NCBI GenBank assembly: GCA_002269645.1
Contig: NIVC01001037.1
Location: 248,001-312,000 of the forward strand
Origin: Macrostomum lignano
Lineage: Eukaryota
Direction of reading: 5' to 3'
Length of the DNA: 64,000 nucleotides
This document shows positions 11,231 through 51,716 of the stretch, piece by piece. The notes below the pieces were generated by a model, which made no database searches, had not been told where the DNA came from, and saw only the letters and a list, made by a program, of their open reading frames with translations. The translations under genes and the position numbers were made by a program. Position 1 is the first letter of the stretch, and each line of letters begins with the position of its first letter.

Positions 11231-11284
11231 GTGAGTGGTGGAGTCTGAGCAGTTTTATAGCAAGGATTCTCAATCTTGATTTGG

Positions 11285-15846: not shown

Positions 15847-15914
15847 GTTTAGCACTGGGTTTCTTGGCGTGCTGATATCGTTTCGTTCCTTGGGTCTGAG
15901 GGATGTTTAATAGG

Positions 15915-17108: not shown

Positions 17109-17439
17109 GCTTTTGCCGCAGGCATTATGCGAGAATTTCTAAACAGAATTTGTCTATGGCCAAACCTCATTAAGCGCTGTGCGAAAGGAAACAATTCTTT
17201 GAGAAACCCGTTTAGAAAACAAAATGTTTCTTGATAGACTTGGTTAGTTTAGCATTCCTCCGCTTCGGCGGTCCGTGTTTGGAAGATGCATTTTAAAAAA
17301 TCAACGATGATTTGCAACTCATGCTACTTACTTCCTAATTAGCCTGTATGAAACACGATAATGCGGTAGGCGCAGTTTAAGAATTTGGCCTCAGACTCTT
17401 TAAGTGGCTCACTGTTTGGGCCTTGGAAATAAACAAGGA

Positions 17440-18415
17440 TGAATGGATAAATGGATGAATTAATGAATGGATGAAGGGATGAAGAGATACGTGAATGAAG
17501 GGATGAAGGGATGAAGGGATGAAGGGATGAAAGGAATGAAGGGATTAATGTACGAATGAATGAATGAATGGATGATAAGATAATAGGGGAAGGGATGAAT
17601 GGATGAATGAATGAAGGGATGAATGGATGAAGGGATGAATGGATGAAGGGATGAATGGATGAAGGGATGAAGGGATGAATGGATGAAGGGATGAATGGAT
17701 GAAGGGATGAAGGGATGAATGGATGAAGGGATGAAGGGATGAATGGATGAATGAATGAAGGGATGAATAGATGAAGGGATGAATGGATGAAGGGATGAAG
17801 GGATGAATGGATGAAGGGATGAATGGATGAAGGGATGAAGGGATGAATGGATGAAGGGATGAATGGATGAAGGGATGAATGGATGAAGGGATGAATGGAT
17901 GAAGGGATGAATGGATGAAGGGATGAATGGATGAAGGGATGAAGGGATGAATGGATGAAGGGATGAATGGATGAAGGGATGAATGGATGAAGGGATGAAG
18001 GGATGAATGGATAAAAGGATGAATGGATGAAGGGATGAATGGATGAATGGATGAAGGGATGAATGGATGAAAGGATGAATGGATGAATGGATGAAGGGAT
18101 GAAGGGATGAATGGATGAAGGGATGAAGGGATGAATGGATGAATGGATGAACGGACGAAGGGATGAATGGATGAAGTGATGAAGGGATGAAGGGTGAAGG
18201 GATGAAGGGATGAAGGGATGAATGGATGAAGGGATGAAGGGATGAATGGATGAAGGGATGAAGGGATGAAGGGATGAATGGATGAAGGGATGAAGGGATG
18301 AAGGGATGAAGGGATGAATGGATGAATGGATGAAGGGATGAAGGGATGAAGGGATGAAGGGATGAATGGATGAAGGGATGAAGGGATGAAGGGATGAAGG
18401 GATGAAGGGATGAAG
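17440..18415. repeat. Purine-rich compound satellite (GGATGAA[G/T])n
   Basis: About 1 kb of GATGAAGG/GATGAATG units ending ~40 nt before the acceptor at 18457-58. Confidence 0.95.
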
Positions 18416-20573: not shown

Positions 20574-21748
<1,175 letters not shown>

Positions 21749-22355
21749 AGACCTTGACTTTAATTTTGGCCTTAAAGTTCGCATCGTATTCTGAGTGCGC
21801 TTAAGACACAATGCGCAATGCGAATGCCCAGACAGCAGAAGCGGAGGACACGACCCTGGCCCTGCCTCAGCCGAAACTGGAAAGCGAAACCAGAAGCTTC
21901 TTACGTTCAAACTCTCTGGATCATCATTTTCAGGGAAAAGTCAGTCGACTTAGTCAATGCTTAGTTAAACTTAGTTAATTGGGCTCTCATATGTGTAATA
22001 AAAATCTAGGGTAAAGGATAAAGGCCACTTGAGGACACACCCAAACGTTAAATAAAAACTTAGTAAGAGAGCCACACAGAAAGGGTTTGAGTTGAAACTG
22101 TCTTCTGCGAAAGACAGACACAGGTCAGTAGATTGAGTGGGGGGCAGGAGGCGGGTTTTTGGCCCTCTCAGTAGGGCAGGTAGGGCGCAAGGTGAGCTTA
22201 GGTGGTCAATAAAATGCAGTGCATTGATGAAAAAAGCCTGGAAACTGTAATACGATGGTGTACAGGGGCAGAACTACAGAGCGACTGACGAGTTCAAAAT
22301 ATTGGCACGCGCAGGCACTGCAAGAGCAGGCATTGTGAAGCTCATCTGGTTTGCG

Positions 22356-25300
22356 ATGGTTCGCATCGCCGGCTTTCGCAAAGTCGTCCGCTGTTGGATT
22401 CTGTTCTGTGCTGCAGTGGCGATCGCAGCAGGGGCTGCAGTGCACTTTTGCTGGCCAGAAACCGCTGGCCAACCGGCCCCAGCTGAAGCTAAGCTGCTCA
22501 GCTCCGACCATCTTGAAACTCCAGTCAATGGCAACAACGTGAACCTGACTGAGTCGCGTGTCAGACGTCGGGTGCCCTGGTGCGGCAACACCAGGCTGTT
22601 ATCGCCAGTTACCGCTCAGGTAGTCCTTGACTCAGAATTGATACCCTTATGAGATTTCCTCACTTTTTCTGTATTTTCTCCAAACTGATATACTTAATGT
22701 ATAAGACAAACTGGGCTTTCTATTTGATACCCTTTTCTGTATGATCCCAGGCCTTTTGCTTGCGGATTTGGCTACAACCTGATCTGCTCTGGGTCTTCTG
22801 TTGTTGGGCCAACGCCCTACCAGATCTTCAGCTGGTGGTCACCGACCTCCCAGATCCTCAGTCGCTGGGCCACCGCCGCTCTCCCAGATCCTCAGCTGCT
22901 AGGTCACCGCCGCTCTCCCAGATCCTCAGCTGCTGGGCCACCGCCGCTCTCCCAGATCCTCAGTCGCTGGGCCACCGCCGCTCTCCCAGATCCTCAGTCG
23001 CTGGGCCACCGCCGCTCTCCCAGATCCTCAGCTGCTAGGTCACCGCCGCTCTCCCAGATCCTCAGCTGCTGGGCCACCGCCGCTCTCCCAGATCCTCAGT
23101 CGCTGGGCCACCGCCGCTCTCCCAGATCCTCAGTCGCTGGGCCAGTCTTCCAGATACTCAGTCGCTAGCCACAGCCGCCGAGATCAATGGGTGTTATTTC
23201 TCTACAATGCATGTTGCTCTACACATGAATCTATGCATTCTCTATCGTCTGCATGAAAGAAATCATGCCATATATGCAAACTATACACATGTAGTATTTT
23301 ACCATATGCATATAACACCGTGCCGTATAGCACCGCAGGCATGAACTTTTAGCTGCTACTGACCGCAAAGCATTAGTGGATAGCTAGTTTTCGAAATCAC
23401 CATAGAAAACTGCAGTAAAAGCTTTCTTGGAAAAATGATTAACACAAAGCTTCAATGTCACTCACTGCATGTACTCTGCACAAAAGGAGTTCCAATTTCT
23501 GAGCAGCCACAGAAGCAACCGAGACCTGTTGGTCTATTCGGCCTTCTACGATCCGAGACTGGCCCCCCGGAAGCCGATAATCCGTAGCACCGGAATCGCC
23601 CGCAATGTCGGCATGAGTGGCCTGATGTGCCAGCTGTGGTACCGGCGGTGGTCGCAGGTGATGGTCACCATGCAAGCTCACGTGGAACGCCTGCCAGAGG
23701 GAGACAGTCGGCGCTACCAGGCTGTGTTGATTACCTGCAGCACTTCCTCCAAGGTTGAAGAGATACCCAGTGCTGTGTCATTTGCATGGTGAGTAAAACT
23801 GTGCCTAAACAGGTGAATCTGATAGCTAAAGATGACAGCAAGATGTAAGAATCACTGCTCCGAACCAAACCAACTGGGATCGATAACTGGTCCGACTGGC
23901 AGCACATCCCGGTCTCCCTCCCTTGAGAAACCCATGGCATAAAGAGGATAAAATTAGGATTTCATGAGGATGCACGCCTCCTCGGTAATCTGAGTAGCTG
24001 CGGCCGGAGTCCTTTAATCCCGTTCGTGACTCGGGACCGCAGAGCCTCGACCAAGACTTCTTCAGTCTTTAGCGAATTCTGTCACCTAGTGTTCTCCGAG
24101 CGAAAAATTTCACATCCTCGTGGTGCTTGGCTGGTTGTTCCCTTAGACATGGGTTCCGAAGTTTGACTGTGAACCCGACAGTAGAGGAGGTGGTGAGAAA
24201 GGTCCTTGTCGGCTCTTCGATGAGGTGAAATACCCATGTAGAAAAAGGACATAACTAATTCTTTGGACAAAGCGACCGGACGCAAGTTGCTTCCGCTTCC
24301 GCAGGTCGCACTGCGCCCAGCCCGCCGGCTTCCTCCCGGTGCGCGTTCTGCCGTCAACGCCGGTCCGCAACGGCCAGTTTGCCGTGTGCATGTCGCCACT
24401 TCACTCGTCTTACGACAATGTTGATGAAGCGGTGCAGACGCTCGAGTTGAACCGCCTGTTCGGTGCCAACCGGTTCTTTGTGTATAGTTTCGCATCGAGC
24501 AAGCGGGTGGCATCGCTGCTTGCCAGCAAACACGTGAGTGATGAAGTGGCACTGTGGGAACTGCAGTTAAACATAGTTGTTGGTAGCTACATGTACATGA
24601 ATTGCAACTCATTACCCATTGGGATTTCTGACAAGAATTGAATTTATGTGTAGCTCTTCACTTTGTGATCTAAACTTTGTGAACTTTGTACAAGCGTCCC
24701 ATTTCAGACTTCTATCTTGGATCTGCATCAGCCACCCTTCGCACCCTTTCGCACCTGCAGTATGCCAAGGACGTCACCGTCCTGCCCTTCCAACCGCCGG
24801 TAAACGTGGATAGGTGGCCACAGCCAAGCAACTACACAGTGGAAGTGAAACACTTCGCCCAGATGGCCATGCTGCAGGACTGTGTGATGCGCGCCTCTGC
24901 CAAATACGAGTTCGCTGTATTCACCGACATGAACGAGGTCGTTGTACCGAGAAGCAAGGGTCTTAGCAACTGGCGGGACCTGGTTCGAGCCCGCATGTCG
25001 GACAATAAAACCGCTGGCCTGTCACTTCAGCACGCAGATTTCTGGCTGGAGTGGCCCGCCGATAGCGAGATGTCAGCCAACGCCACGATCTCCGGCCTGA
25101 AGCTGAGCGCTCTGCTGAAACTGCACCACGACGAGGTGCGCCTACACGGCACCCCGTCAAAGATGATCGTCAAGCCGCATTTCGTGCAACTCATGGGCGT
25201 GCAGTTGATGTGGCGGTACACCAAAGGTTGGGGCACAGAGTATGTCAACTTCCGGCTCGCTGGCGTGCATCGCTACCGAAGCTGGAAGGACCTCGGTCCA

Positions 25301-25420
25301 CAGGACAGCGATCAAGTTCGCGATCCGACCCTGCTGCGCTATAGGGAGCAGCTCGTTGCTAACGTTCTGCGAGCCAGGACTGCCCTGGGCCTGCCCCTGC
25401 CTATCCATATTTCTGATTGA
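22356..25420 (+). CDS. Glycosyltransferase family 92 / DUF23-type type II membrane protein; exons 22356..22619, 23487..23788, 24305..24533, 24761..25420 (484 aa)
   Basis: N-terminal TM (WILFCAAVAIAAGAAVHF), then motifs LVYSAFYDPR, FAVCMSPL, ELNRLFGANRFFVY, QMAMLQDC, FAVFTDMNEVVVP, SKMIVKP, VHRYR. All three junctions are GT-AG and phase-compatible (0, 2, 0). The first junction has the weakest sites. Confidence 0.8.
22825..23150. repeat. Intronic minisatellite, 34 bp unit (CCGCCGCTCTCCCAGATCCTCAG[TC/CT]GCTGGGCCA)
   Basis: About 9 copies in intron 1 of the GT92 gene. Confidence 0.92.
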
Positions 25421-26108: not shown

Positions 26109-28935
26109 CTAAGCCTCCGGACCGATGAAGCTGGCAATCAGCTTCAGCAGGAACAGCAGCCGCCTGCCGACGTCATCCGACACGGTTTCCAAGGTGGCAG
26201 AGACCAGGCGCCTCAGGCTATCGGAGGCCAAGCCTCTAGCGCAGGCGTCACGCGATCCAGCGCCTGATTCACCGAGCCCGGCAGCAACTCTGAAGCCGAA
26301 TTTCAGCATCGCCTTGAGCAGCCGGTTCAGTTCGGCGGGCAGCTTGACGAGGTCGTTCTCCAGCTCCAGTACGCAGAGCTGCGCCCAGGCTGCCGCATCC
26401 TCTGGCGAGTTGGCTGCCGCAGCAAGGCTAGAGCTCAGCTCCGAGCTCAAATCGCCGTCCAGGGGAACCCGTCGAATCACCTTCTCGATAGGGTAGGGCG
26501 CCCGGTCCGGCGGGAAGTACATGTACATGTCCAGGCGGCCGCTGGGATCGTGCTCGTCGTTGGGCGCATAGGAGAATCCGCAAATCGAGTCGGTGTCCGG
26601 ATTCGCCTCAACAAACAGCAGGTGAATTGGAGCGGCCTCACCTCTCTCAATTACGATGTGGTCCCAGCGGTGCAGGCATCCGAAGTCCGTCACGTGTTCG
26701 TTCGCTTCCGGTGGCTCACTCCCGGCTGCGCTGTCAACCGACAGTAGAGCGGCCAGTTCAGCGAGGCCGGGTCGGCGCAGGCCGCGCAGCCAGGCGCAGA
26801 AGCGGCTGTCCGACACTCCGAAGCCCAGGCGTCTGTCCGAGGCGTTTGTTAGCGACGAGCCGAGTAGAATTTTTGACGTGTCGCTCAGCATTTGAGCCTT
26901 CGATTCGCTCACAGCTTGCTCATCGCCGTACGTCACCCGGCTCACGCGGCTACCTTCACTGATCTTGGTTATGGTCAACTTTTGCACACTGTTTGGCTGC
27001 CAGTCAATATCCGTCAGACTCAACTTGGCGAGGTCGATGCACTCCCCACACGGGCTGACGGCAACAAGGCGAGCTTCGGCAAACTGCGACGTTTCCGAGC
27101 TGTCAGAACGATCGTGAGAAAATCGCAGCTGACCCTGGCCCAGCGCGGTCAGGGCGAGCAGCTGGCTGATTTCAGTCACAACGCCCAGGTGCCTAGGCGC
27201 GTTGGTCTTGTGATTGACGCAGCACCAGCGGACAAAGTCGCATGAGTTGTTCCAGGCGCAGGAGTAACCGTAGGTGCCAATCCGAGCCACCGCTTTCTGT
27301 AGCGCTTGCTCTCTTGGAGCCAGCAGCTCTGCACTGACTTGGAAGTGTAGTGTACTAAACACGTGCCCCTTTTCTGGCACTTGGACAGCGCCGATGCACA
27401 ACGTTCCCTCTCCACCGAAGCAGATTACATCAACCGACAAGCCTTTGCTGTCGTCTTTATTCACTCCTTTCACAATGGCGTGAAGACCAGGCAGATTGGT
27501 TTCCAACGGATGAGCGTCTGACTTTTCTCGGATGCACACCGCATCGCCAGGCTGCAAGTCAGTGACTTGCGCCACTGGCTGCTCTGTGATCGACGGCAGG
27601 TCTTTCTGCTTCCACGTCCTCAGTATCGGACACTGTAGATCTGGCTCGCTATGCCGAACCAGCTGAATTTTATCGTGCTCAGTTGGATCAATCACGATAC
27701 GGACTTGCTTAGTATGTCGCGTCGCGTCAGTATTCACCCGTAGGTAGTCGAGAATCTCAAACTTGTACGCAGTTTTAGGATCTGCTGGCCGCTGCACGGA
27801 CAGCACTATTTGGACGCGGTCGTCGTGCGCGATTACGTTTCCAGAGACCAGCTGGCTGGCCGGGACTCTGGTTCGGCGACACTCTGGTTCCGCGCGAACG
27901 CCGCTGAGAGAGAAGGTCATCGCCATGAGCGGACTGCACCCCCAAGACAAGCAGACTCCTGTGAAGCATTCGACAGTCTGGTGAACATCCTGTCTACGGA
28001 ACTGAAGGTTCAACCGATCAATTGGATCGCTTGAATCAAGACTGATCGATGTTCTAGTGAATGCGTGCAGGTTGGCAACATCTGACGTAGCGGCAACAAT
28101 ATCCAGGATCATGTACTTTCTGACCGGATCAAGACGCTTTGCATTAACGATGACTGCACGAATGTCGCGGTTAAAAAGTGACACATTGACGTGATCAGCC
28201 GGCATCAGCTGGTGCAGCTCTCTCCGGTTGTCGTCGAGCAGAGGAACCCGAACGCTGTCCAGGTTTCTCGAGTCCCGAACTCGACACCACACGGCCAAAG
28301 TGTGCGCGTTGTTGCTGGTTGGAGAGTGCTGTCTCTCACCGAGGCGGCTGAGTGCCCGAGACAGCGATTCCTCGTTTGAGTACAGCACCGAGTTCGAGAA
28401 TGTGTGCAGCCACACACTGGAGCCGTTGCAAGGCAGCTGGAAGTCCTCACGCCGTACCGTGATGGGGCTCATCAGGCTCAGCCTCCCATAGTGGATAGCC
28501 GTAACAGCCAGTTCGTTCTCATCGGGAGAGTAGCTGCAGGTCTCCACCACCACCTTGTGCGGAATCTTGTAGTAGTACAAGTTTAGAACGTTGCCTAAAA
28601 TTTCCATTTAAATACGTCGATTGGTAAAACCTAGATTTTTTAACTCAAACCATTTGTTACTAGAAAAGTGTATGCTCCTTACCTGGTCTGATGGTCTTGG
28701 CCAGCTCGCTGGTTACTTTTTCGGAACGCTCGTCTGGCACAGGCGTTGTAGCCTCACGGATGCTCCTCTGCCAGCAGGCGTCCTCCAGTACGGCTCGCAG
28801 CCAGGGCTTGCTAATTATGGCTTGCTTGAGCAGCCACAGCTGCTGCTCTCTGGTCATCAGAGTGAGCTTCTCCAGCTCGCGGACTGAGCACTCCAGCTGC
28901 TGCGTCAGCTGCGAGAGGTCGGCAGGGGCGGCCAT
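26109..28935 (-). CDS. Uncharacterised 912-aa protein with tandem degenerate LRAT/NlpC-P60-like repeats, paralog 1; exons 28683..28935, 26109..28594
   Basis: 832-codon open frame plus an upstream 253-nt exon (donor AG|GTAAGG, acceptor ttttAG, phase 1). The same exon structure occurs in paralog 2. LRAT-like motifs: RPGNVL..PHKVVV..AIHY..RALSRLGE..SNNAHTLAVWCR and LQPGDAV..GLHAIV..RIGTYGYSCAWNNSCDFVRWC. Confidence 0.85.
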
Positions 28936-30460
28936 TTTCGAGTCTTGCTATACTAAGAGCTTCTGGTTGCAACACCGCTTTGGACTGCAGCTGTGTAGTT
29001 TTGTTTTTCTACAAGGTCACAGTACTGCAGATTATAAATAATTATAATATAAAATATAAGATTATAAAGCACCAAGAAACATCTAAGACTTGTAGGCAAG
29101 TGTTGTCTAAATTGGACTAAGCCCAGCGCGTGCGCCTCAGCAGATAAGCTTTGAGAGATTTGCACAAGGCTTACTACAAGTGTACGCTGTCGCATAGCCC
29201 CGGACAGACAAGCACAGCTCTCAACCCTCTGTCTCTCACTGTTTTCTGTCCAAAGCATTCAGTTTGAAGTGCATAGTTGCCTGTACATATCTTGCAGTAT
29301 CTGGTTGTGCATAGGCTCGCAGTATCTGTCTAACCAAGCACTACAGCCCCCTCTCGGAGAGAGAGAGTTAAGCCTGACTATTATTGAGTGCGTCGTGTAA
29401 GGTCTGAGAAAGTTCTGAGGTTTTGAGAATTTCAGTTTATTTAGTCTGTAAAACAGGCACGTAGCTCGTACAAGCTAGACAGTGTAACTTCTTTCATACC
29501 TTGCAATCCTACTTTAATTAGAGTTTATGCTATTGACGCGCACTAATCGATTCTGTTACTCAGAACTATTGATGTGATTTCTCAAAAAAGTCAGAAGCTA
29601 CCGGTACAATTTCGACAGTGACCGCCGATGCTGACCAACTGTTCTAAAGCTCAGTTCAGCTTCAAAGAGTTACTGCTAAGAAAGATTTTCCCTGTTTCGA
29701 CAGAGAAAATGCGTAAGAGACGCCTGCAACGTCCTTTTCCCAGTGTTTTAGAAGTCCATGAAGCCAAACCTTGCTGTATCTGCCAGGGCTGGCGCATAGC
29801 TAATCGAGTGCCCTGCGGCGGCGCCAAAATAAGTCTTAACTACACGTACCGGTTGCCAAAATGATGTAGGGATTTTATCATGTAGAAAGGGATTATATAG
29901 TAGCTTCCTATATAGAAATTAATCTATTGGTTGTCTTTGTACTTTTCCCTTTGGTATCTTCGACATCAACCATAGACAACACTGTACGCTGAGTAGGAAG
30001 CCCTGAACATAATACGAGAAATATACTCGCCCCAGAGCGCTACTAAAAGCTACCCAAAAGCTCTAACAGCTCTAAACTTGTAGCAACTTGGCCCAGCGGC
30101 TTTGCCTACTCAAAAATCGAGTTCAAAGACAGTTCGTGTAGGCCAAGAACTCAAAGAGCAGATGGACGGGAAGTTACTCTTGAACTCTGAGCCACCACTA
30201 TACGCTCAAGACCATTTTGTTAACATCACAATAAAAAAGGCCCATTTTTCTGCGATCACGTGGCTTTGTACTATTAAAAAATCACATTGGTACATCCCGT
30301 CGTGCTTTTTGTCGGCTCAATTCATGACGGAGTGAATGAACCTTAATTCGATTTGGGTTAATATATATCGTAAAAAGCAAGGCAGCCAACAAGAAACAAA
30401 TAAGCAAGACAGTTATGACTACGTAAAAGGATGTTCTCACTAAATTAATAAATTTAAGAG

Positions 30461-30769
30461 GGTTGTAGCTTAGTGGTCAGAGCGTCGGACTCACTATTTG
30501 AAGGTCGGGGGCTCGATTTCCGAACCAACGAGGACAATTTGTGTCCTTGAGCAAGACACTTAACTCTTGGTTGCTTCAGTTCACCCAGCTGTAAAATGGG
30601 TGCCAGCATTAGCTGGGGTAATTGAGGGTGTGTGTGGCGACCCCCCCCCCCTTGGACTGAACAGCCGTACGCAGCCTTCAGATGCGCCGCGCAATAGCTG
30701 CGGATGAGCTGTCGGTCGCACATCTGGCCCAATTTAAGCAGGTTCAATCAATTTTAACAATTATTATTA
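30461..30769 (+). mobile_element. tRNA-derived SINE with CORE-like central domain, copy 1
   Basis: Head GGTTGTAGCTTAGTGGTCAGAGCG (A box) and GGGGCTCGATTTCC (B-box-like). Centre TGTGTCCTTGAGCAAGACACTTAACTC...CTGTAAAATGGG resembles the MIR/CORE consensus (from memory). (TTA)n tail. A second copy lies at 40537..40842. Confidence 0.85.
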
Positions 30770-31415
30770 AAATTTCCTCTGATCTGATTGATGATACACG
30801 TTATTAGAATAAGAAATTAAATGTTTTAAAAACCGATTTATACGAGTAACTGTTACCATGGCGTTTCTAAGCAAACAAACTTCGACTGGCAAGACCGTAG
30901 TCGGTCTCCAACAAACATATATTTAATCCCTATCTACATGTAAGTTAACAGACTGAATGAAGTACATGCTTAAAAAATGTTCCAGTCAGCACTCATAATT
31001 CCAATGCTAATACTTTGCTTAATTAATCCAGTAAACCAGTTTTTGTATTTGAAGCGTTTAAACCATAGAAATTTGTTAAATCATGAACAGATCAGTGCAG
31101 GTTTTCAGGATAAATATTGGCGCAAGTTTTTGAAATTGAGAGCTGCAGAGCAGAAGTATGTCAGAGGAAAAAATGATTTCTGATAGGATGTTGGGCTTTA
31201 AAACCAATCAACGGAATCATGATTTGGGCGGAACTATGAATTGATTAATTTTTCTCTCAGAATGACGGTGAAACTGGGTAGAAAGTTTCTAAAACGTTCC
31301 GAAGCAATTCAACTCATCCAGAAGGTCCCAAGGTGCTGTACAGTACATCTTGTTTGGGTCAAGCCTATACTGAATAAATAAGCATGAATGTAAACACGAA
31401 ATCGTCACAGCACTT

Positions 31416-34352
31416 TTATTCCGACTCAACCATGCGAGCCATCAGCCGGACAATAAAATACAGTCGCCGTGAAGCGGCTTCGCAGCGCAGGTCGTTCTTC
31501 AGTGAACTCGCGAACCCGTCCGAAGCGAGGACGGCGCGGCAGGTCTGCAGAGAGCCATCGTCGGGATATTGGCCCGAAGCGTAGCGGAAAGCAAACCTGA
31601 GCATCAGCTTGAGCAATTTGTTGAGATCGTCGTCTAACTGCGGCAGAAGGTTTGAGTCCAATTCGAGCGCGCAGAGCTGGGCCCAGGCCGCCACATTGTC
31701 GGCGAAGTTGGAGCCCGCGGCAAGACTGGCGCTCAGCTCGGAACTCGCGTCGGTGTCTATTGGAGTTCGTCGGATGACCTTGTGCATTGGATAGGTGGCC
31801 TTGTCCGGCGGAAAGTACATGTACATGTCCAGGCGCTTGCCAGGATCCTGTTGGGGCCTTGGTGCATAGGTGTAACCACAGAGCACCCCGGACTCAACGT
31901 TGAACTCCAAAACTAGCATGTGTAGTTGAGGTGCTTGAGGTCTCTCAATAACTACATGATCCCACTGGCTGAGCTCGTACAGATCTGCAACTTGTTCCAG
32001 GTCTTGCCCCGAGCCAATGTCTGCTGCAGCATCGGCCGACAGCAGAGCAGGCAGCTCGACCAGACCGGCCTGCTTCAAGCCTCGCAGCCAGGTACAGAAA
32101 GCTTGGTCCGAAACGCCGCAGCCTAGCTGGCGATCAGAGGCATTGGCAAGGGACACGTCGAGTAGAATGTTGATTGTTTCGCTCAATATCCGAGCCTGCG
32201 CTTCGCTTACCGACTCGCCATTGTAAGGCACCCGTCGTACTTTTTGAAGCTGGCTGGTGTTCTCAAGCTTAACAATTTGCACCATCTTAACTGACCAATC
32301 GACGTTAATCAGGCTCAACTTCAAAACATTGGTGAATTGGTTCGGAGAGCTCACATCGATCAGACTCACTTCGCGAAGCACACTTTGGTCAGCAATCTGA
32401 TGCTGCAGCCTCACTTTCGCCGACTGCTGCATAGATGAAAGCGTGGCCAGATCTGCCGGCTTGGTCACTACTCCGATGTGCGACGAAGCGTTGGACTTGT
32501 GATTGACACAGCACCAGCGAGCGAAGTCACGCGAGTTGTTCCAAGCGATGCAGTACTGATCAGTGCCAAGACGAACCTCCGCTCGTCTCAAAGGATCCTC
32601 TCCGTCCGAAAGCAAATCACGGCTAACGTTGAAGTTTATCTTGCTGAATTTGTGATCGCTCACTGGCAGGCGCTTGACTTCAACCAAGCCGGAGCCGCCC
32701 GCGTTGAAGCAGATCACTTCCACAAAACCATCACTGGTGCTGTTTCTCCTGACAATAGCGTGCAGGCCAGGCATTAGTGGCGACAGTGGATACTTGGCTT
32801 TACACTCCTGGACCTGGATTGAGACAGCGTCACCTGGCTGAAGTTGACTCAGATCTTCTACAGCTTGCGTAGTAATCAACGGCGAATCCATGGATTTCCA
32901 GTTCAACAAAACTGGACACTGCAGGTCGGGCTCAGCGTGCCGCACCAGCTGCACTTTGCCCGCCTCACGCAGGTTGACGAGCAGGCGAATTTCGGTCGTC
33001 TTCGGCGCCGTCTGCAAGTTTAGCGGCGCGTAACAAACCGTGTGAATCTGATAGGTTTGGTCGTCACGCTCCGGCTGGTCCACCTTCATCACGAAGTGAA
33101 TACGGCCTTGGTAGAAAATCAGCTCGTTAGAACGAAGTTCGCTGACATGGATGGTAAAGCGAGCGCGCGCCTTGGGCTCGACGGCCGTTCCTGTTGCCAA
33201 AAAGTTTATTGCCATCAAATCCGAGCACTCCTGGCACAGGTGAGTGTTGTTGAATATTTCCGCATTCTTCTCGACATTGGTGCGTTTCAGTTCCAGCTGC
33301 AGTTTTTTAACGCGCTCATTCGGGTTTATAGCGAGCATAGTTCTACCAAAAGTTTGAAGCGCATTTCCGTTGACCTGTAAACTTTCCGACAGAGCCACTA
33401 CAGAAAGTACTTTTCTTTCGTTGACTTCGTCAAGAGACTCGATCGAAGCGATGATGGCGTGCACCTGCTGATTTCCGATCGATACATCTATGTGATCAGC
33501 CGGCATGAGCTGGTGCAGCTCTTTCCGTTTGTCGTCTAGCAGAGGAACCCGAACGCTGTCCAGGTTTCTCGAGTCTCGAACTCGACACCACACGGCCAAA
33601 GTGTGCGCGTTGTTGCTGGTTGGATAGTGCTGTCTCTCACCAAGGCGGCTGAGTGCCCGAGACAGCGATTCCTCGTTGGAGTACAGCACCGAGTTCGGGA
33701 ATGTGTGCAGCCACACACTGGAGCCGTTGCAAGGCAGCTGGAAGTCCTCACGCAGCACCGTGACGGGGCTCATCAGGCCCAGCCTCCCATAGTGGATGGC
33801 AGTAACGGCCAGCTTGTTCTCATTGGCAGAGTAGCTGCATGTCTCCACCACCACCTTGTGCGGAAGCTTGTAGTAGGACAAGTTTAGAACATTTCCTGTC
33901 AATTGTAGTTAGGTGAATGGATATTGTGTCATAGTCGTACATGTACAAGTTTGAAATCCTATGCATCCATGACTATTTTAGCTTGGTTAATAAAGTTTCG
34001 GGGTAATAACCTTTGCAACATTAGATGTGGGCAGTTTAACAGCACAGAATGCTTTACAGCTAAGCTTACCTGGCTGCACATTCTGAGCGATCTCACTGGT
34101 GACGCCAAGGTGAGCTTCGCTCGGCACCGGGACAGCCGCCTCTCGAATGCTGCGCTGCCATTCGGGATCTTCCAGGACGGCTAGAAGCAGGGGATTGTTG
34201 AGCAGCACCTGCTTGAGCAACTGCAGCTGTTGCTCTCGGTCTAGCGATTCGGTTTGAGCCAGAGACTGGCTGAGGTGCTGCGCCGCAGCTCTGGCAACTT
34301 GACCGAAGTCGCCGTCAATATCCACGGGTTGAGGATCAAAACGGTTTGCCAT
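31416..34352 (-). CDS. Uncharacterised 920-aa protein with tandem degenerate LRAT/NlpC-P60-like repeats, paralog 2; exons 34070..34352, 31416..33895
   Basis: 828-codon open frame colinear with paralog 1 over its full length. Exon 1 starts at ATG 34352 (MANRFDPQP...EQQLQLLKQ...LEDPEWQRSIREA). Donor AG|GTAAGC, acceptor gacAG, phase 1. Confidence 0.85.
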
Positions 34353-35232: not shown

Positions 35233-36422
35233 ATGTCCGATGCCAACTCGGCCGTTCTGGTGATTGACTGCGGATCCGGCACCTGCAAGGCCGGCTTTGT
35301 GAGCGAGAAAAGGCCTAGGAAATTTTTTTAGCCTTGTAAGGAAGCCGAATTACAAATATAAGTTTTTGTTTTACATTACAGCTTCACATGCCCAAGATTA
35401 CAGCAATTACTATAACTTAGAACTAAAGGCTAAAACTATAAGCAATCGAACTTCCGAACTTGGTTAGGGCGTTATTTTCGGCATAGGCCAGAAGGATACC
35501 TACGTCGGCGAGGAGGCGCAGAAGAGACGCGGCTTCGTGGAACCGAAGTATCCGATCGAGCACGGCGTTGTGACAAACACGGAGAAGATCTGGCACCACA
35601 CCTTCCACAAGGAGCTCCGCGTGGCCCCCGAGGAGCACTCCATACTGCTCACTGAAGCGCCGCTCAACCCCAAGGCCAACCGCGAGAAAATGACGCAGAT
35701 CATGTTCGAGACCTTCAACACGCCCGCCATGTACGTCGCCATCCAGGCCGTGCTGTCGCTGTACGTCAGCGGCTGCACCACCGGCATCGTGCTGGACTCT
35801 GGCGAGGGCTCTACAGACGCGGTTCCCATCGATGCGGGCAAGCCGATAGCCAAAGCCATCTCCCAAACTGATCTGGCTGGTCGCAGTCTCACTGAAAAGC
35901 TTGTGGATATACTCAAACAGCGCGAATTCAACTTCAGATCGTCCGCGACATCAAGGAGAAGCTGTGCTACGTGGCGCTCGACTTCGAGCACGAGCAACGC
36001 CCTGGAGAAGAGCTACGAGCTGCCCGACGGTCAGCTGATTAGCGTCGGCAGCGAGCGCTTCTGCTGTCCGGAGGCGCTGTTTCAGCCGTCCTCCCTCAGA
36101 CTGGAGCACGTCAGCATCCACCAGACAGTGCTTGACATCGTCACCAAATGCGACGTAGATATCAGACGGGACCTTTGCTCAAACGTTGTGCTCAGCGGCG
36201 GCTCCAGAATGTTCCCCCGGTATCGCCGACCGCCTGCAGAAGGAGATCGCCGGCCTGGCGCCCTCCGACGTCAAGATCAAAGTGGTGGCGTTGCCCCAGC
36301 GGAAGTACTCGATGTGGGTCAGCAGCTCGATCCTGGCCTCGCTGAGCACTTTCCAGTCCAAGTGGATCACCAGGCAGGAGTACGACGACTGCGGCCCGGG
36401 CATCGTGCACAGGAAGGGCTGA
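35233..36422 (+). pseudogene. Divergent actin pseudogene (frameshifted)
   Basis: Actin motifs [71 protein letters not shown]. Lesions: a T7 run (35323-29) gives an in-frame TAG; no GT at the expected intron-1 donor (aaa tataag); deletions near 35938 and 36000; an extra C at 36214-18. Confidence 0.85.
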
Positions 36423-38388
36423 GGGCTGAGTTTGAAATCTATGCGGAGCTCAATTTTGCTCTGTCAATGGATTTTGCACTTTAATTTTTGTATTTGTGAG
36501 ATGGAAATGTTTTTATGCAGATTCGCTGCTTAATGATTCAGTTTTATTAAATGGTATTGCTTTGTTTCCGATCGCAAACTGAAGTGAATTTTGCGTCCAA
36601 ATTTCGTAAAATTTGCGGTTGGAAGTTTTTAAGTTTTGCCTCAGATATTCGTTATCAAACTTGAGTCAGTTTGAGCGTCATCAAGGTGCTCCTTTCAAAT
36701 TATTTTATCTGTCGAGAAAGTTTTGCTTGTTGGTTGCAGCGTAATTTTGAATGCATTTTTACTTGTTAATAAATTTATGATACTTATGCAAATCATCTGC
36801 ATTCGATGTCATATTTAGTTATTTTTTGTAGCTTAACTTCTGAGCTGTAAGTTTCTAACTGAAGTTGAATTGCGTAGTGCATGTCTACTATAAGTACGGT
36901 GGATGGCACCTAATGAATCCTTATTTTTTGTCTTTTTGTTGTGATAAAATCAAAATAGAAGAGCTTGACAGCGTGAGAACTAAGACTACACGAGATCTAT
37001 AATTATGGTGCATTAGTACCCTGTTATTAACTCATTTTCTCTTTGACTGCGATTGCAAAAATTCGCCCTATCTACCTTATGATATAAGGCATATTCGAGT
37101 GCTGTGAATCACTGCTCTGATGGGTCTGTTGGCCTCATTGGCCTGACTTTGTGTCTCTGGGTCACAGGGTGCGTCTTAAGACCTGAGATCTTCGGGAGTC
37201 ATGAGATGGAGGAAGTCCTCCTCGTCGTGGATGAAAATGGCCGGCCAGCTGGAGTCGCCGGTGGCGCGACAGTTCACTCTCGGACAGGTGCAAAACTGCC
37301 GCCTTGAATTTCTCTTGAGTCATTTGTGTACGGATTGGCCATGCAGTTGGAGGCTCGCTACGAGTCCAAGGTACACTGCATCGAATCACTGTGTCACACC
37401 CTCAAACCGAGCCGCCACAACTTCTGCCCAGCTATTTGGGCTACTGTTAAATACACGGTGAGTGAACCTCCATTTTGTTAAGTTTAGCACCGCCAAGTCA
37501 CCCTGATAACATGCAAGTGAGGTACTGGTTAGAATCTCGTCCGGCTGATAAAGACCTGCCTGCATGCTAGCCGTAAGTCAGCTCGTTCACTCATTGAGTA
37601 AGTTGAATTTTTGCTTTAGAAAAAATTTAATAGCCGTTTTGAACTTTAAAGGGAGCTGCCGCCGCTTCACGGCATCACGCCATCGTGAGAGAGCCCAACC
37701 ATTGGCGGAGCTCTTAGTCGCGCTATTCGACTTTTAAAGAACGCAGCTGTGTTAGCGGTTAAGTTCTTGATGTTTCTATTGTCATTTCAAATTGCAGCTC
37801 CGGTCCCAGGCAATTTACTCGGGGTGAGCAACTGCCCACATTGCATTGTTGAAATTCTCTCCAGTTATCTCGTGCATTTGATCAGCTTTGAAGGCTGCAT
37901 TCTCTCCCTCTATCCTCCCTGTGTCTCCTCGCGGGCAACCTTGTAATTAAGCATGTTCAAGTCCGATGAAAAGAAGAATTACCGTTGAATGCCGGGGCTA
38001 AGGGACACGTTGGCGGCGAGTGGGCGATGGAGGCTGGTTGTTGAATCCTGCGGCCATCTTCACAGCTATTTTATTGCTGCTCTGCTTCATATTGAATAGA
38101 CTCCATTGTGCGAGAGTGGCTGCAAGAGAGCTGGGGCGCGGGGTGGCCGCGCGGTGCTCAGGGGTAGAAAAAGAGACGCAGAATCTGAGCATCATCAAAT
38201 TTTGATTTGAACAAGCCCAGACTTGCTGCTCCGAAGCAGTCGCGGCGGCTCCCCCTTCTAAGCCCTCCCTGAGGCCACTCCGACAGAGCGGAGCTCTTTA
38301 GCGCCTAACTGCTCGCTTGACACGCTTGGCAGGCAGACAGAAAAGCAGAAGCACCCTAAAACGCAGTTCTTGCCAAATTTCAGTAAGG

Positions 38389-38413: not shown

Positions 38414-40089
38414 ATGGCCAAATGGACGAGCACTGACGACACGGCGAGTGTGGTGCCATTTGTGAAGATCGACTCCTGCCAGCAGCTTGAGGAGACCTTC
38501 CAGTTCGGCGAAAAGCTCGGAGAGGGCGCCTTCGGCAGCGTGCTGCTGGCGCTGAGAATCTCCGACGGGCACAAATTCGCCGTAAAGAAGGTAAATCAGC
38601 TGTCAGAATGAAGCCAAGCTGGAATTCTCCTTTCTCAATGCAGTTTGGCCTGGGCAAAGTGCACGTCAGAGAGGGGCCAAAGAGATGGGGACTGTCTGCG
38701 GGCCCCAAATCCTCCCCCACTTAGTTCGATGTGCTATCTACCAGCCCAGGTTGAGATAGGGGCAGGGGCGCCCACCAAAGCACCAAGCATTGGTACTCCT
38801 TAGGGTTGCGTAATTTGTAGTCCTACTATTTTTAATGGATTATTTATTTGATTCGCCATAACTTACTTCCCTCCGCCGCCTCAGATGGTGAAGAAGAAGG
38901 ACCCGAAGACGCAGTACGGCAAGTCCTGGGAGAACGAAATCCACGTTCTGAGCCGGCACCGGCACCCCAACATCGTCGCCGTGGACGCCATCTACGAGTC
39001 AGAGAACAGCTGCTACCTGTTCATGGAGCTGTGCGACGGCGGCAACCTGGCCGACGAGTTGCAGCGTCGGACTCGATTCGCTGAGCAGGACGCCAGGTGC
39101 ACCTTGAGGCAGCTGGGCAGCGCGCTGAGCTACCTGCACCGCCACCGGGTTGTGCACCGCGACCTGAAGCTGCACAACTGCCTGCTGAAACGAATCCCGT
39201 CGGCTAAAACTACCGACGGCAGCAGTCCGCGTTTCTGCCGACGTCGAGGCGAAGCCGCTGTGGACCGCAAGGGGTCACCGGCTACGCACCCGTGCCCGTT
39301 TGTGGTGAAGCTCACCGACTTCGGCTTGTCGATTGAACTGCGCGTCTCCGACCAGTCGCTGGGCGACAACGTCGGCACCCCGGCTTATCAGGTGCGGATA
39401 GTCATGGCCTTCATGGCGATGCGGGGAAACATTGGGCAAGCAGGTAATGAAGTTCGCTAGTCACGATAGGGACGGACCATTGTACTCCGTCAATTACCAT
39501 GCTGTGATATGATGAGATGAATGAGATATGATGGCCCCTTGCACCATAGCAAGTCCTCCGTAGCTACGCCTCTGTGTGTATGAGCAGGTTTCAAATTCGA
39601 AGCCCATTTGGTTTCATTGTGACTTAACTACTTTCAGCCATCTCATGAGGAGGTATCAGGTATGGTAGAAATTCCTGCCGCAGTGACTTCAATCATCCAT
39701 TCAACCAACCCGCCAAATCCATGCAGGCGCCAGAAATCGTGAAGTGCAGCAGCTACACAGAGAAATGCGACGTCTGGTCGTTGGGCATCATCATGTTCAG
39801 CCTGGTGCACGGCAGCCTGCCCTACTCCAGCCGGTCGGAGTCCGACCTCATCGACGAAATCAAAGATTTCAATTACGGCCGACTCTGCAGCCGCTGCAAG
39901 ACCTGCTCGGAGCTCAGCGCCGAGTGTCGAGCCGCTCTGAGCCACCTGCTTGTTCAATCAGCCGTGGACCGCTGGTCAACGTCCGAGTTCATGGACTCCG
40001 CCTGGGTGACGGAGAAGTCCGGCGGAGCGCGGGAGGGCAACATCCTTGCCATGATGCGCGACGTCAACAGGACTACTAAAGACAAGTAG
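38414..40089 (+). CDS. STK33: STK33-like Ser/Thr kinase (CAMK group); exons 38414..38590, 38885..39391, 39727..40089 (348 aa)
   Basis: LGEGAFGSV, FAVKK, LFMELCDGG, HRDLKLHN, KLTDFGL, GTPAYQ|APE, CDVWSLG. The C-terminal GNILAMMR resembles the STK33 tail (NVLEMM). Both junctions are GT-AG, phase 0. Confidence 0.85.
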
Positions 40090-51225: not shown

Positions 51226-51716
51226 TTGGGGTAATTGGAGTGGAAAATCAACATGCTTAACTGGTGCGCAACAAGCAAAACAAAGGTGGCATCAAACTCA
51301 AGGCATAAAGTGCATGAATATGATAAAATATTCTGCTAAAAGTACAACTAGTAGGCAAATAAAAACTAAAAAAACAATAAATCCGGCATTTCATCATCTG
51401 AAAATGCTCTAAAAAAGTTTTTTAAGAATTATCCCTTGATAAAAATAGGTAAGAGCAGGAGAGGTGGATCACAGCCTGCAGTAAGCTGCAATTACAGCAC
51501 TAGCACAGCCTAGTTAAAGTACAAAAACATTATCTACAGGGTACAAAGAAGGAAACAAAACATTTTTTGACGATACGCTAAAAGTCAGAATCAGGAAATG
51601 GTATCTACAAATAAAGCATGAGCAAGCAGACAGACGGGGGGTGCTAGAGCAGGTGAGAGAAATCAGAATTTTCTACACAGATTCGGGCATCTATAACAAT
51701 TTTTGTTGAACAGCTA

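What the first reader, a model, noticed from the sequence alone, without database searches (positions are those of the whole stretch)
26109..34352. Tandem pair of large proteins built from ~6 degenerate LRAT (NlpC/P60) repeats with no catalytic Cys
Seen: both ~910-920 aa proteins repeat the LRAT/HRASLS-type pattern L-x-P-G-D-H-(I/V)...H-x-x-(I/V)...(I/V)-H-Y...R-A-x-x-R-L-G...N-N-C-E-H-F-A-x-W-C. Repeat starts: IRPGNVL, LMPADHV, LVSGNVI, LQPGDAV, ISQLL, LHRWDHIVI. Repeat ends: RALSRLGERQHSPTSNNAHTLAVWCR, RIGTYGYSCAWNNSCDFVRWC, SDSRFCAWLRG, AAWAQLC. The nucleophile position is Ala in repeat 1 (NNA at 28305-13 and 33606-14, both His retained) and Ser in repeat 4 (NNS at 27243-51 and 32532-40) in both paralogs. 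Known: LRAT-family proteins are normally small single-domain acyltransferases/phospholipases that use NNC, and picornaviral H-box/NC proteins share the fold. Inferred: an apparently undescribed multi-LRAT pseudoenzyme or Ser-nucleophile family, possibly a lipid-binding scaffold or decoy. The almost intronless layout, tandem duplication and divergence resemble immune-type genes. Repeats 1 and 4 are clear; the others are weak.
Basis: partly seen in the sequence, partly recalled or inferred. Interest (0 to 1): 0.85.

Follow-up and report, generated by a model that had tools for sequence, protein, structure and literature searches.

The report
Cys-less multi-LRAT-module flatworm gene pair
Two neighbouring flatworm (Macrostomum lignano) genes encode ~915-residue soluble proteins made of six degenerate copies of the LRAT/PLAAT lipid-enzyme domain; unlike their own paralogues they have lost the catalytic cysteine motif and the membrane anchor, so they are most likely non-catalytic offshoots of an uncharacterised invertebrate enzyme family.

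Summary
The window is Macrostomum lignano DNA.

Evidence for the six LRAT-like units:
- Units 1 and 4 are clearly LRAT-like (profile-profile probability 99.6-100%).
- Units 5 and 6 are moderately supported (~94%).
- Units 2 and 3 match only the N-terminal half (~94%).
- Reversed and shuffled controls score 1% or less.

The nucleophile position is Ala in D1, Ser in D4 and Asp in D5. In D6 the motif is deleted.

The pair is not a stand-alone family. At least six other M. lignano paralogue clusters are collinear with it. In the full-length paralogue models, D6 keeps a canonical NCEHF module followed by transmembrane helices. The window pair lost both, yet shows purifying selection (omega ~0.25-0.3).

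The D4 Ser is not conserved among paralogues (S/D/R/G), so a Ser nucleophile is unlikely in this family.

Bivalve proteins show a related design: one His-His-Cys module plus 3-8 His-His-Ser modules. I found no literature on any of these proteins.

A ~410-bp gene-conversion tract explains why D1 is nearly identical in the two genes. Function is inferred only.

The parts
26109..28935 (-). Gene A (BOX15_Mlig006580g1, PAA73093.1), 912 aa. Exon 1 is 28935..28683, the intron 28682..28595, and exon 2 28594..26109 including the stop.
31416..34352 (-). Gene B (BOX15_Mlig026335g1, PAA73094.1), 920 aa. Exon 1 is 34352..34070, the intron 34069..33896, and exon 2 33895..31416 including the stop.
28702..28935 (-). 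Gene A N-terminal helical region (aa 1-78). It has no family match and is conserved only between A and B. The B equivalent is 34089..34352.
28230..28701 (-). Gene A unit D1 (aa 79-206, spanning the intron), a clear LRAT-like module. His97 and His119 are kept, and Ala181 (28305-28307) sits at the nucleophile position. The B equivalent is 33531..34088 (H107, H129, A191).
27891..28229 (-). Gene A unit D2 (aa 207-319). Only the N-terminal beta half is LRAT-like (93.6%, 62 columns). The His1 equivalent is Arg230 in A and His240 in B. A nearly invariant Cys304 (27936-27938) has unresolved equivalence. The B equivalent is 33180..33530.
27588..27890 (-). Gene A unit D3 (aa 320-420). Only the N-terminal half is LRAT-like (94.3%, 62 columns). 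H399 and C406 are invariant across the family. The B equivalent is 32874..33179.
27186..27587 (-). Gene A unit D4 (aa 421-554), a clear LRAT-like module. His456 is kept, Cys476 replaces the second His, and Ser535 (27243-27245) sits at the nucleophile position. This is the only part that Pfam LRAT touches. The B equivalent is 32475..32873 (H473, S549).
26730..27185 (-). Gene A unit D5 (aa 555-706), a degenerate LRAT-like module (93.6%, 104 columns). The first His is lost in A and B, Asp sits at the nucleophile-equivalent position, and the 'DxxFCxWL' helix is kept. The B equivalent is 32028..32474.
26346..26729 (-). Gene A unit D6 (aa 707-834), homologous to the canonical catalytic module of the paralogues. 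His730 and His742 are kept, but the 'LFFNNCEHF' stretch is deleted and replaced by 'EDAAAWAQLC'. The B equivalent is 31644..32027.
26109..26345 (-). Gene A C-terminal helical tail (aa 835-912 plus the stop). It has no transmembrane segment, whereas full-length paralogues continue into 2-3 TM helices. The B equivalent is about 31416..31640.
28185..28594 (-). Gene-conversion tract in gene A. It starts exactly at the exon 2 boundary and pairs with 33486..33895 in gene B. Nucleotide identity is 90-97% and dS 0.16, against ~45-50% identity and dS ~2 elsewhere.

Best explanation
These are two tandemly duplicated, functional Macrostomum lignano genes. They encode soluble, probably cytosolic proteins of ~915 aa: an N-terminal helical region, six successive modules descended from the LRAT/PLAAT domain (the circularly permuted NlpC/P60 fold), and a helical tail.

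They belong to a flatworm gene family whose full-length members carry five Cys-less LRAT-like modules, then one canonical His-His-Cys (NCEHF) PLAAT-like module, then C-terminal membrane helices. Such members are presumably membrane-anchored phospholipase/acyltransferases. The window pair has deleted the NC motif of that last module and lost the membrane anchor. No recognisable module keeps the nucleophile: Ala in D1, Ser in D4 (not conserved among paralogues), Asp in D5, deletion in D6.

I therefore read them as pseudoenzymes that act by binding rather than by acyl-enzyme catalysis. The modules would serve as lipid/acyl-chain or protein-interaction surfaces, possibly pairing with or competing against the catalytic paralogues.

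Shown: gene structure, homology, module map, state of the catalytic positions, loss of the NC motif and TM tail, purifying selection, gene conversion.

Inferred: cytosolic location, lack of catalysis, and the binding or regulatory role.
For: Identity and gene models.

Family. One search found 62 relatives. P0004-P0009 are collinear over D1-D6 (E 1e-30 to 1e-42) and all are M. lignano. Alignment A4 shows the canonical FNNCEHFVNxLIYGR motif and hydrophobic tails in P0004, P0007, P0008, P0009 and P0066, against a 9-residue gap and no tail in A and B.

Pfam LRAT. It passes its gathering score in P0004, P0007 and P0008 (50-54 bits, at D6) and in P0009 (35 bits, at D4).

Hydropathy. The Kyte-Doolittle maximum is 1.5 (A) and 1.2 (B), against more than 2.2 in the tailed paralogues. 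No TM or NCEHF coding remnant lies elsewhere in the window.

Module homology. The iterated HMM gave D1 2.5e-34 and D4 1.7e-18. hhalign probabilities were 94-100% with clean controls. A profile of 41 Cys-less modules finds only PLAAT structures in the PDB: 4dpz at E 0.0078 over the full length, then three PLAAT3 chains.

Structure. The AF2 model built on the 12-sequence alignment (pLDDT 64) gives each of the six units the same five-strand, two-helix pattern, with A181 and S535 as the first residue of the second helix. The named Foldseek BFVD hits with probability 0.99 or higher include a C51/CHAP peptidase and a giant-virus LRAT.

Catalytic-position tally.

Selection. Omega is ~0.25-0.3 in every region including D6, with intact 2.7-kb ORFs despite saturated dS.

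Precedent for a His-His-no-Cys LRAT pseudoenzyme: FAM84B (PMC7140883).
Against: - Neither A nor B reaches Pfam's LRAT gathering score, and D1, D2, D3, D5 and D6 of A get no Pfam hit as single sequences.
- The whole-model Foldseek search of the PDB gave nothing significant and no PLAAT hit. Domain-level structure comparison could not be done.
- D2 and D3 are supported only over their N-terminal halves. Their beta parts could equally be small SH3/Tudor/Sm-like barrels, as weak Foldseek hits suggest.
- A nearly invariant Cys in D2 and an invariant His/Cys pair in D3 are unexplained and could form a cryptic active site.
- Ser535 with His456 could in principle be catalytic.
- There are no expression, localisation or biochemical data, and the regulatory or binding role is pure inference.
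Confidence: 0.6

Rival explanations
1. Cryptic enzyme. The proteins are still catalytic, using a non-canonical site. Candidates are the nearly invariant Cys of D2 (C304 in A, C318 in B, the latter with His240), the invariant His399/Cys406 pair of D3, or Ser535 with His456 in D4 acting as a Ser-His dyad.
For: C304 is nearly invariant, and H399 and C406 invariant, across 12 family members. Paralogues read 'FCLHLTN' at the D2 site, which resembles 'NCEHFVN'. A greedy hhalign extension puts that Cys on the NC Cys. Outside this family, His-His-Ser is the commonest module state (88 of 182), which hints that Ser may be selected.
Against: The D2 and D3 C-terminal halves alone score within the shuffle range against LRAT profiles, and the greedy alignment has near-zero column confidence. 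The His1 equivalent of D2 is Arg in gene A. D2 has no second His. The D4 position is S, D, R or G among paralogues, and D4 lacks the second His. AF2 confidence is below 50 around C304.
Confidence: 0.15
2. Only four of the six units (D1, D4, D5, D6) are LRAT-derived. D2 and D3 would be unrelated small beta-barrel (SH3/Tudor/Sm-like) spacer domains, and their 'PGD..H' similarity would be convergent or a remnant.
For: hhalign matches for D2 and D3 stop after about 62 columns, and their C-terminal halves show no signal. Local Foldseek hits of 85-110 columns to Pelota/Dom34 N-domains, a Tudor domain and small phage barrels have probabilities of 0.8-1.0.
Against: The 62-column matches are in register with the start of the LRAT module, including the GD motif and the first His. 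They score 94% against 1% or less for controls. The AF2 model gives D2 and D3 the same five strands plus helices as D1 and D4. Foldseek does not report which query region produced the barrel hits.
Confidence: 0.3
3. Immune or defence-type decoys. The Cys-less soluble paralogues would mimic the catalytic family members, or host PLAAT-like factors, to intercept pathogen or toxin molecules.
For: The family is a lineage-specific expansion with at least 8 paralogue clusters in M. lignano. Other paralogues also appear to sit next to each other: PAA47238/39 share a 43-kb contig and PAA65928/29 a 168-kb contig (inferred from consecutive accessions and equal contig lengths). Divergence is fast (dN ~0.5) and there is gene conversion. 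Vertebrate PLAATs are involved in virus entry and pathogen restriction (PMC10102619, listed).
Against: There are no expression or infection data. Omega of ~0.25-0.3 shows purifying, not diversifying, selection at this resolution. Tandem expansion is common for many non-immune gene families.
Confidence: 0.1
4. Decaying pseudogenes: non-functional duplicates of catalytic paralogues on their way to loss.
For: Loss of the NC motif and of the membrane anchor.
Against: Both ORFs are intact over ~2.75 kb although synonymous sites are saturated (dS ~2). Omega is ~0.25-0.3 in every segment, including the 'dead' D6. Splice sites are conserved. A further copy of B, grouped with it in one 90%-identity cluster and of equal length, lies on another contig (PAA67411.1).
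Confidence: 0.03

Closest known systems
PLAAT/HRASLS1-5 and LRAT (Pfam PF04970; circularly permuted NlpC/P60 thiol acyltransferases/phospholipases)
   Same: The module sequence pattern matches: PGD..., first His on strand 2, second His on strand 3, an 'RAxxRLGE' helix, then the N-N-x-x-x-F helix. A Cys-less module profile aligns end to end with PLAAT2 (4dpz residues 11-121). The D6 modules of the paralogues carry NCEHF and a C-terminal membrane anchor like PLAAT1-4 (PMC4624172).
   Different: There are six modules per chain instead of one. No module in A or B has the Cys113 equivalent, and there is no TM anchor. Neither protein reaches Pfam's gathering score. Thioester catalysis as in PLAAT/LRAT is therefore not expected.
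LRATD1/LRATD2 (FAM84A/FAM84B), vertebrate LRAT-domain pseudoenzymes
   Same: FAM84B keeps H23 and H35 but not C113 and lacks PLA/AT activity (PMC7140883). D1 of A and B is in exactly this state (H97, H119, A181). FAM84B is also a soluble protein that associates peripherally with membranes (PMC8536394).
   Different: LRATD proteins have a single LRAT domain with a proline-rich region (PMC8536394). Here there are six modules with a different flanking architecture. Orthology was not tested, and the flatworm proteins clearly derive from a local multi-module family.
M. lignano paralogues P0004-P0009 (e.g. PAA52141.1, PAA47238.1, PAA47239.1, PAA65928.1), labelled 'LRAT domain-containing protein' by UniProt
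   Same: They are collinear over D1-D6 at 19-22% identity and share invariant residues in every unit. Their D1 to D5 units have the same Cys-less states. They also appear to sit in adjacent pairs.
   Different: Full-length paralogue models keep FNNCEHF in D6 plus 2-3 C-terminal TM helices, whereas A and B have a 9-residue deletion there and no hydrophobic tail. A and B also have their own N-terminal helical region.
Bivalve multi-LRAT proteins (e.g. Potamilus streckersoni KAK3603616.1, Mercenaria XP_053378500.1, Mytilus XP_076105740.1, Sinanodonta KAL3874825.1); a related hemichordate protein (Ptychodera XP_070560329.1) has degenerate modules followed by one His-His-Cys module
   Same: The design principle is the same: one canonical His-His-Cys module plus several Cys-less LRAT-like modules in one chain. 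D1 and D4 of A and B match these modules at E 1e-10 to 1e-25.
   Different: In the bivalve proteins examined the catalytic module comes first, followed (where I inspected the sequence, P0010) by a hydrophobic region, and then by 3-8 modules that are mostly His-His-Ser. In the flatworm family the catalytic module comes last, and the Cys-less modules are more degenerate (Ala, Ser, Gly or Asp at the nucleophile site). All are uncharacterised.

Membership tests
LRAT / PLAAT domain family (Pfam PF04970) | Sequence match to the Pfam LRAT model at or above its gathering score (24.3 bits) | tested here: not met
   A scores 22.0 bits and B 23.2 bits, covering only profile positions 81-117 at D4. Isolated D1, D2, D3, D5 and D6 get no hit. 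Paralogues do pass (35-54 bits).
LRAT / PLAAT domain family (Pfam PF04970) | Remote homology of the modules to bona fide LRAT/PLAAT domains by profile methods | tested here: met
   D1 and D4 score 99.3-99.5% against a profile of canonical Cys-bearing non-flatworm modules. The Cys-less module profile hits PLAAT2 4dpz at E 0.0078 over the full length, and the next hits are all PLAAT3. D5, D6, D2 and D3 score ~94% against the mixed profile, with controls at 1% or less.
LRAT / PLAAT domain family (Pfam PF04970) | H-box: two conserved His residues (H23 and H35 of PLAAT3) | tested here: met
   D1 has H97 and H119. D6 has H730 and H742. D4 has only the first (H456; the second is C476). D5 has lost the first. 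D2 has Arg in A and His in B at the first position and no second His.
LRAT / PLAAT domain family (Pfam PF04970) | NC motif with the nucleophilic Cys (C113 of PLAAT3, NCEHF) | tested here: not met
   The position is A181 in D1, S535 in D4 and Asp in D5, and the motif is deleted in D6. The states are identical in B.
LRAT / PLAAT domain family (Pfam PF04970) | Permuted NlpC/P60 fold: antiparallel sheet carrying the His residues, with the nucleophile at the N-terminus of a helix packed on it | tested here: inconclusive
   In the AF2 model (mean pLDDT 64; D1 and D4 at 70-90), each unit has five strands plus two helices, with A181 and S535 as the first helix residue. Whole-chain Foldseek gave no significant PDB hit and only weak BFVD hits to a CHAP peptidase and a giant-virus LRAT. 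Per-domain searches were not possible.
PLAAT1-4 type tail-anchored enzymes | C-terminal hydrophobic membrane anchor | tested here: not met
   The highest 19-residue Kyte-Doolittle mean is 1.5 (A) and 1.2 (B), against more than 2.2 at the C-termini of the paralogues. No tail-like coding sequence lies elsewhere in the window.
LRATD1/2 (FAM84A/B) pseudoenzymes | LRAT domain with both His residues kept and the catalytic Cys replaced | tested here: met
   D1 is H97/H119/A181 in A and H107/H129/A191 in B. The FAM84B state is taken from PMC7140883.
LRATD1/2 (FAM84A/B) pseudoenzymes | Single LRAT domain architecture and orthology to vertebrate LRATD | not tested
   The architecture clearly differs (six modules). 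No LRATD sequence was compared directly.
M. lignano multi-LRAT-module family (P0004-P0009) | Collinear D1-D6 architecture with shared invariant residues | tested here: met
   E 1e-30 to 1e-42 over profile positions ~88-830, 12-sequence alignment A4, and tblastn of paralogue D6 against the window at E 1e-6.
M. lignano multi-LRAT-module family (P0004-P0009) | Terminal canonical NCEHF module followed by TM helices | tested here: not met
   There is a 9-residue deletion in place of 'LFFNNCEHF', and the tail is truncated and non-hydrophobic.

The most novel reading that the evidence does not exclude
Chains of Cys-less LRAT modules would be a previously unrecognised class of accessory or regulatory domain for PLAAT-type membrane-acting phospholipases. 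They normally sit fused to one catalytic module in flatworms and bivalves. Here the window pair would be a free-standing soluble version that regulates or antagonises the membrane-anchored catalytic paralogues. A still bolder version holds that the widespread His-His-Ser modules are genuine Ser-nucleophile acyl-hydrolases of the NlpC/P60 fold.
Probability: 0.15. Interest if true: 0.7.

Novelty: new variant of a known kind. Interest (0 to 1): 0.45.

Why it matters
LRAT/PLAAT enzymes are normally small single-domain, tail-anchored thiol acyltransferases/phospholipases. They have roles in lipid signalling and organelle breakdown, and PLAAT3 serves as a picornavirus host factor.

This locus belongs to an uncharacterised invertebrate design in which one catalytic module is fused to many Cys-less copies. 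It also offers a natural 'all-dead, anchor-less' variant that is still under purifying selection. That makes it a clean system for asking what non-catalytic LRAT domains do, which is also the open question for vertebrate LRATD1/2. It could likewise show whether the common His-His-Ser variant is an enzyme.

M. lignano has RNAi and transgenesis (PMC11075559 and PMC7053086, both listed), so the question is testable. The finding is of moderate, specialist interest. It is not a new fold or a new kind of system.

Tried and rejected
1. Internal repeats by BLAST self-comparison: none. The repeats are visible only with profiles.
2. PDB sequence searches with the full two-sequence profile or with D1 and D4 two-sequence profiles: only chance hits.
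3. AF2 with the two-sequence alignment: pLDDT 34, unusable.
4. Whole-chain Foldseek against the PDB: nothing significant. The top hits (DegQ/DegP, sialidase) have TM scores below 0.1 and were discarded.
5. The word-indexed homologue search returned only the two window proteins, both with the single sequence and with the family alignment. With the module alignment it returned 3 bivalve proteins.
6. Pfam scans of D2, D3 and D5 taken from paralogues: no LRAT hit.
7. Testing whether the conserved D2 Cys aligns with the NC Cys: a greedy alignment places it there, but the C-terminal half alone scores within the shuffle range, so the equivalence is not claimed.
8. The 'WC' Cys seven residues after the nucleophile position (C188, C542) as a substitute nucleophile: rejected, because the same WC follows the true Cys in canonical bivalve modules such as 'CNCEHFCNWCC'.
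9. The hhalign 'Nt-D3' hit (96.5%): an artefact of P0008's extra N-terminal repeat occupying those alignment columns.
10. The 89% identity of D1 as a sign of strong constraint: rejected in favour of gene conversion, because synonymous sites are equally identical.
11. Literature searches for the gene identifiers or for multi-LRAT proteins: nothing.

Full report
**What is there**

ORF listing shows two long minus-strand ORFs, 26109..28607 and 31416..33902, each preceded by a short upstream ORF. Reading the junctions gives canonical GT..AG introns.

- Gene A: exon 1 28935..28683, intron 28682..28595, exon 2 28594..26109, 912 aa.
- Gene B: exon 1 34352..34070, intron 34069..33896, exon 2 33895..31416, 920 aa.

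The translations are identical to NCBI proteins PAA73093.1 and PAA73094.1 of the flatworm Macrostomum lignano, which lie on one 375-kb contig. The two proteins are 50% identical over their whole length. Neighbouring genes are ordinary animal genes: a GT92 glycosyltransferase, an actin-like ORF, Cys-loop receptors and kinases.

**Is the LRAT resemblance real?**

At the level of single sequences it is marginal. Pfam LRAT (PF04970) touches only the NC-motif part of repeat 4, at 22-23 bits against a cut-off of 24.3. BLAST finds no internal repeat, and PDB sequence searches with two-sequence profiles find nothing.

The picture changes with relatives. A profile search of 1.84 billion representative proteins returned 62 hits. 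Six clusters (P0004-P0009, plus cluster mates) are M. lignano paralogues collinear with A and B over nearly the whole length, and UniProt calls most of them 'LRAT domain-containing protein'. The remaining hits match mainly the D1 region, often several times per protein. Those whose source I could look up are from bivalves (Potamilus, Sinanodonta, Mercenaria, Mytilus), a hemichordate, and M. lignano itself. Of those 54 proteins, 48 carry Pfam LRAT.

An HMM seeded on D1 and iterated on these 66 proteins joins three groups. These are D1 (aa 81-204, 2.5e-34), D4 (aa 429-551, 1.7e-18), and the canonical LRAT modules of the bivalve proteins, which Pfam recognises. E-values here refer to a small database.

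A profile built only from 41 Cys-less modules finds only PLAAT structures in the PDB. PLAAT2 (4dpz) comes first at E 0.0078, aligned from the GD motif to the NC helix, followed by three PLAAT3 chains.

**Six units**

I cut the 12-sequence family alignment (A4) into segments and compared each with the 218-instance module profile by hhalign.

| Unit | Probability | Aligned columns |
|---|---|---|
| D1 | 100% | 127 |
| D4 | 99.9% | 117 |
| D6 | 94.4% | 107 |
| D5 | 93.6% | 104 |
| D3 | 94.3% | 62 (N-terminal half only) |
| D2 | 93.6% | 62 (N-terminal half only) |

The C-terminal tail gave 0.2%. Reversed and column-shuffled versions of every segment gave 1% or less. Against a profile of canonical Cys-bearing non-flatworm modules only, D1 and D4 gave 99.3-99.5% and D6 97.2%. 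The C-terminal halves of D2 and D3 taken alone score within the shuffle range, and single-sequence Pfam scans of D2, D3 and D5 from paralogues find nothing.

An AF2 model built on the 12-sequence alignment is moderate (mean pLDDT 64; 70-90 in the cores of D1-D4 and D6). It gives every unit the same five strands followed by two helices, with A181 and S535 as the first residue of the second helix, which is where the nucleophile of this fold sits. Whole-chain Foldseek was not decisive:
- Nothing significant in the PDB.
- In BFVD, a CHAP/C51 peptidase (probability 1.0, E 7e-3) and a giant-virus LRAT (probability 0.99, E 0.05).
- Short local hits to SH3/Tudor/Sm-like barrels in both libraries.

The added qualification is that D2 and D3 are recognisable only in their beta halves.

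**State of the catalytic positions**

By the alignments:

| Unit | First His | Second His | Nucleophile position |
|---|---|---|---|
| D1 | H97 | H119 | A181 |
| D4 | H456 | replaced by C476 | S535 |
| D5 | lost in A and B, kept in paralogues | not assessed | Asp |
| D6 | H730 | H742 | 'LFFNNCEHF' stretch replaced by a 9-residue gap ('EDAAAWAQLC') |

Gene B is identical in all these states.

One caveat remains. A nearly invariant Cys lies in the unalignable part of D2 (C304 in A; paralogues read 'FCLHLTN'), and an invariant H399/C406 pair lies in D3. I cannot assign these, and they are the basis of the 'cryptic enzyme' rival.

**What the relatives say**

In the full-length paralogue models (P0004, P0007, P0008, P0009, P0066), D6 is a canonical 'FNNCEHFVNxLIYGR' module. 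It passes Pfam's threshold at 50-54 bits in P0004, P0007 and P0008 and is followed by 2-3 strongly hydrophobic helices (Kyte-Doolittle above 2.2). A and B have no segment above 1.5. P0005 keeps the NCEHF motif but its model ends soon after it, and P0006 is truncated at the motif. Neither tblastn of the paralogue tails nor of their D6 modules finds any additional coding remnant in the window. The loss is therefore genomic and not a gene-model artefact, as far as this window shows.

The bivalve relatives follow the same principle in another order. One His-His-Cys module comes first, then 3-8 modules that are mostly His-His-Ser. In P0010, whose sequence I inspected, a hydrophobic stretch separates the two. 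Over all non-flatworm modules the tally is 88 His-His-Ser, 29 His-His-Cys and 5 His-His-Ala. 'One catalytic module plus several Cys-less modules' is thus a recurrent invertebrate architecture, and the window pair is the variant that has dropped the catalytic module's active site and the anchor.

**Are the genes alive?**

Outside one tract, synonymous sites are saturated (dS ~2) while dN is ~0.5. This gives omega ~0.25-0.3 in every segment, D6 included (rough because dS is saturated). Two intact 2.75-kb ORFs with conserved splice sites at that divergence are not pseudogenes. Another copy of B (PAA67411.1) and a partial copy of A (PAA46453.1) lie on other contigs.

**Gene conversion**

D1 is 89% identical between A and B, against 50% overall. 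Identical synonymous codons rise from ~40-50% to 88-95% there, and dS drops to 0.16. The DNA alignment shows a block of 90-97% identity that starts exactly at the exon 2 boundary (28594 / 33895) and ends near 28185 / 33486. The introns are unalignable and identity returns to ~45% beyond the block. This is a recent non-allelic conversion tract of ~410 bp, not extra constraint on D1.

**How it most likely works**

*Established.* PLAAT/LRAT catalysis needs the NC-motif Cys to form a thioester, with the first His as base and the second as its orienting partner (PMC4624172). FAM84B/LRATD2 keeps both His but not the Cys and has no PLA/AT activity (PMC7140883). It is a soluble protein that associates with vesicle membranes (PMC8536394).

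*Inference.* A and B lack the Cys in every recognisable module and have no anchor. They should not perform PLAAT-type catalysis, and act instead through binding, either of lipid or acyl chains or of partner proteins. The most economical idea is that they pair with or compete against the membrane-anchored catalytic paralogues, whose own five Cys-less modules presumably have the same accessory role in cis.

I put 0.9 on the structural and evolutionary description, about 0.6 on the whole statement including 'non-catalytic', and much less on any specific partner.

Rivals are a cryptic Cys or Ser active site (0.15), D2 and D3 being unrelated beta-barrels (0.3, a sub-claim), an immune decoy role (0.1), and pseudogenes (0.03).

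**Comparison and novelty**

The domain family is known, and so is the idea of a Cys-less LRAT pseudoenzyme. Databases already tag the paralogues as LRAT-domain proteins.

As far as I could find, three things are undescribed:
- the multi-module architecture;
- its spread in flatworms, bivalves and a hemichordate, with His-His-Ser as the dominant module type;
- this anchor-less, all-Cys-less derivative.

I rate it a new variant of a known kind, of moderate specialist interest (0.45), not the 0.85 first assigned.

Noticed in passing
window 28185-28594 and 33486-33895: A ~410-bp gene-conversion tract between the two tandem paralogues. It starts exactly at the exon 2 boundary. Nucleotide identity is 90-97% and dS 0.16, against ~45-50% identity and dS ~2 elsewhere. 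The introns are unalignable.
   Followed up: yes
window 27936-27938 (C304), 27651-27653 (H399), 27630-27632 (C406); gene B 33225-33227, 32937-32939, 32916-32918: A nearly invariant Cys in D2 ('xFCxHLTN' in paralogues) and an invariant His/Cys pair in D3 ('CVHND..LDC') across all 12 family members. They lie in regions that cannot be aligned to the LRAT model, and their role is unexplained.
   Followed up: partly
relatives P0010-P0031 (bivalves): Bivalve multi-LRAT proteins have one N-terminal His-His-Cys module followed by 3-8 modules that are mostly His-His-Ser. Ser replaces the nucleophile in 98 of 182 non-flatworm module instances, and the full His-His-Ser triad occurs in 88 of them. This raises the question of whether it is a working Ser variant.
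   Followed up: partly
window 35537-36484 (+): An actin-like ORF that matches Pfam Actin from profile position 59 onward in two stretches. Parts of the translation look out of frame relative to actin (for example '...[22 protein letters not shown]...'). It may be an actin pseudogene or an interrupted gene.
   Followed up: no
window 771-23144 and 46057-58384, many sites: The window is crowded with mini- and microsatellite arrays (43 TRF rows with score at least 200). Examples are (GACA)n at 20574-21752, an 8-mer repeated 122 times at 17437-18415, and 29-32-bp units at 771-1737 and 8691-9655. Several long 'ORFs' and their odd Pfam hits (Cornifin, cytochrome c3) are just these repeats.
   Followed up: partly
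window 10017-11234 (+) and 14864-15910 (+): Two neighbouring Cys-loop ligand-gated ion-channel gene fragments (ligand-binding domain plus the start of the membrane domain), which look like another tandem duplicate pair.
   Followed up: no
window 24339-25420 (+): A glycosyltransferase family 92 gene lies immediately downstream of gene A on the opposite strand (convergent). Protein kinase fragments lie at 38885-39460 (+) and 51714-52787 (-).
   Followed up: no
other M. lignano contigs: Catalytic paralogues also appear to sit next to each other. PAA47238 and PAA47239 share a 43-kb contig, and PAA65928 and PAA65929 a 168-kb contig. This is inferred from consecutive accession numbers and equal contig lengths; I did not fetch the contigs. 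Gene B has a further copy, in the same 90%-identity cluster, on another contig (PAA67411.1), and gene A a partial copy (PAA46453.1).
   Followed up: partly
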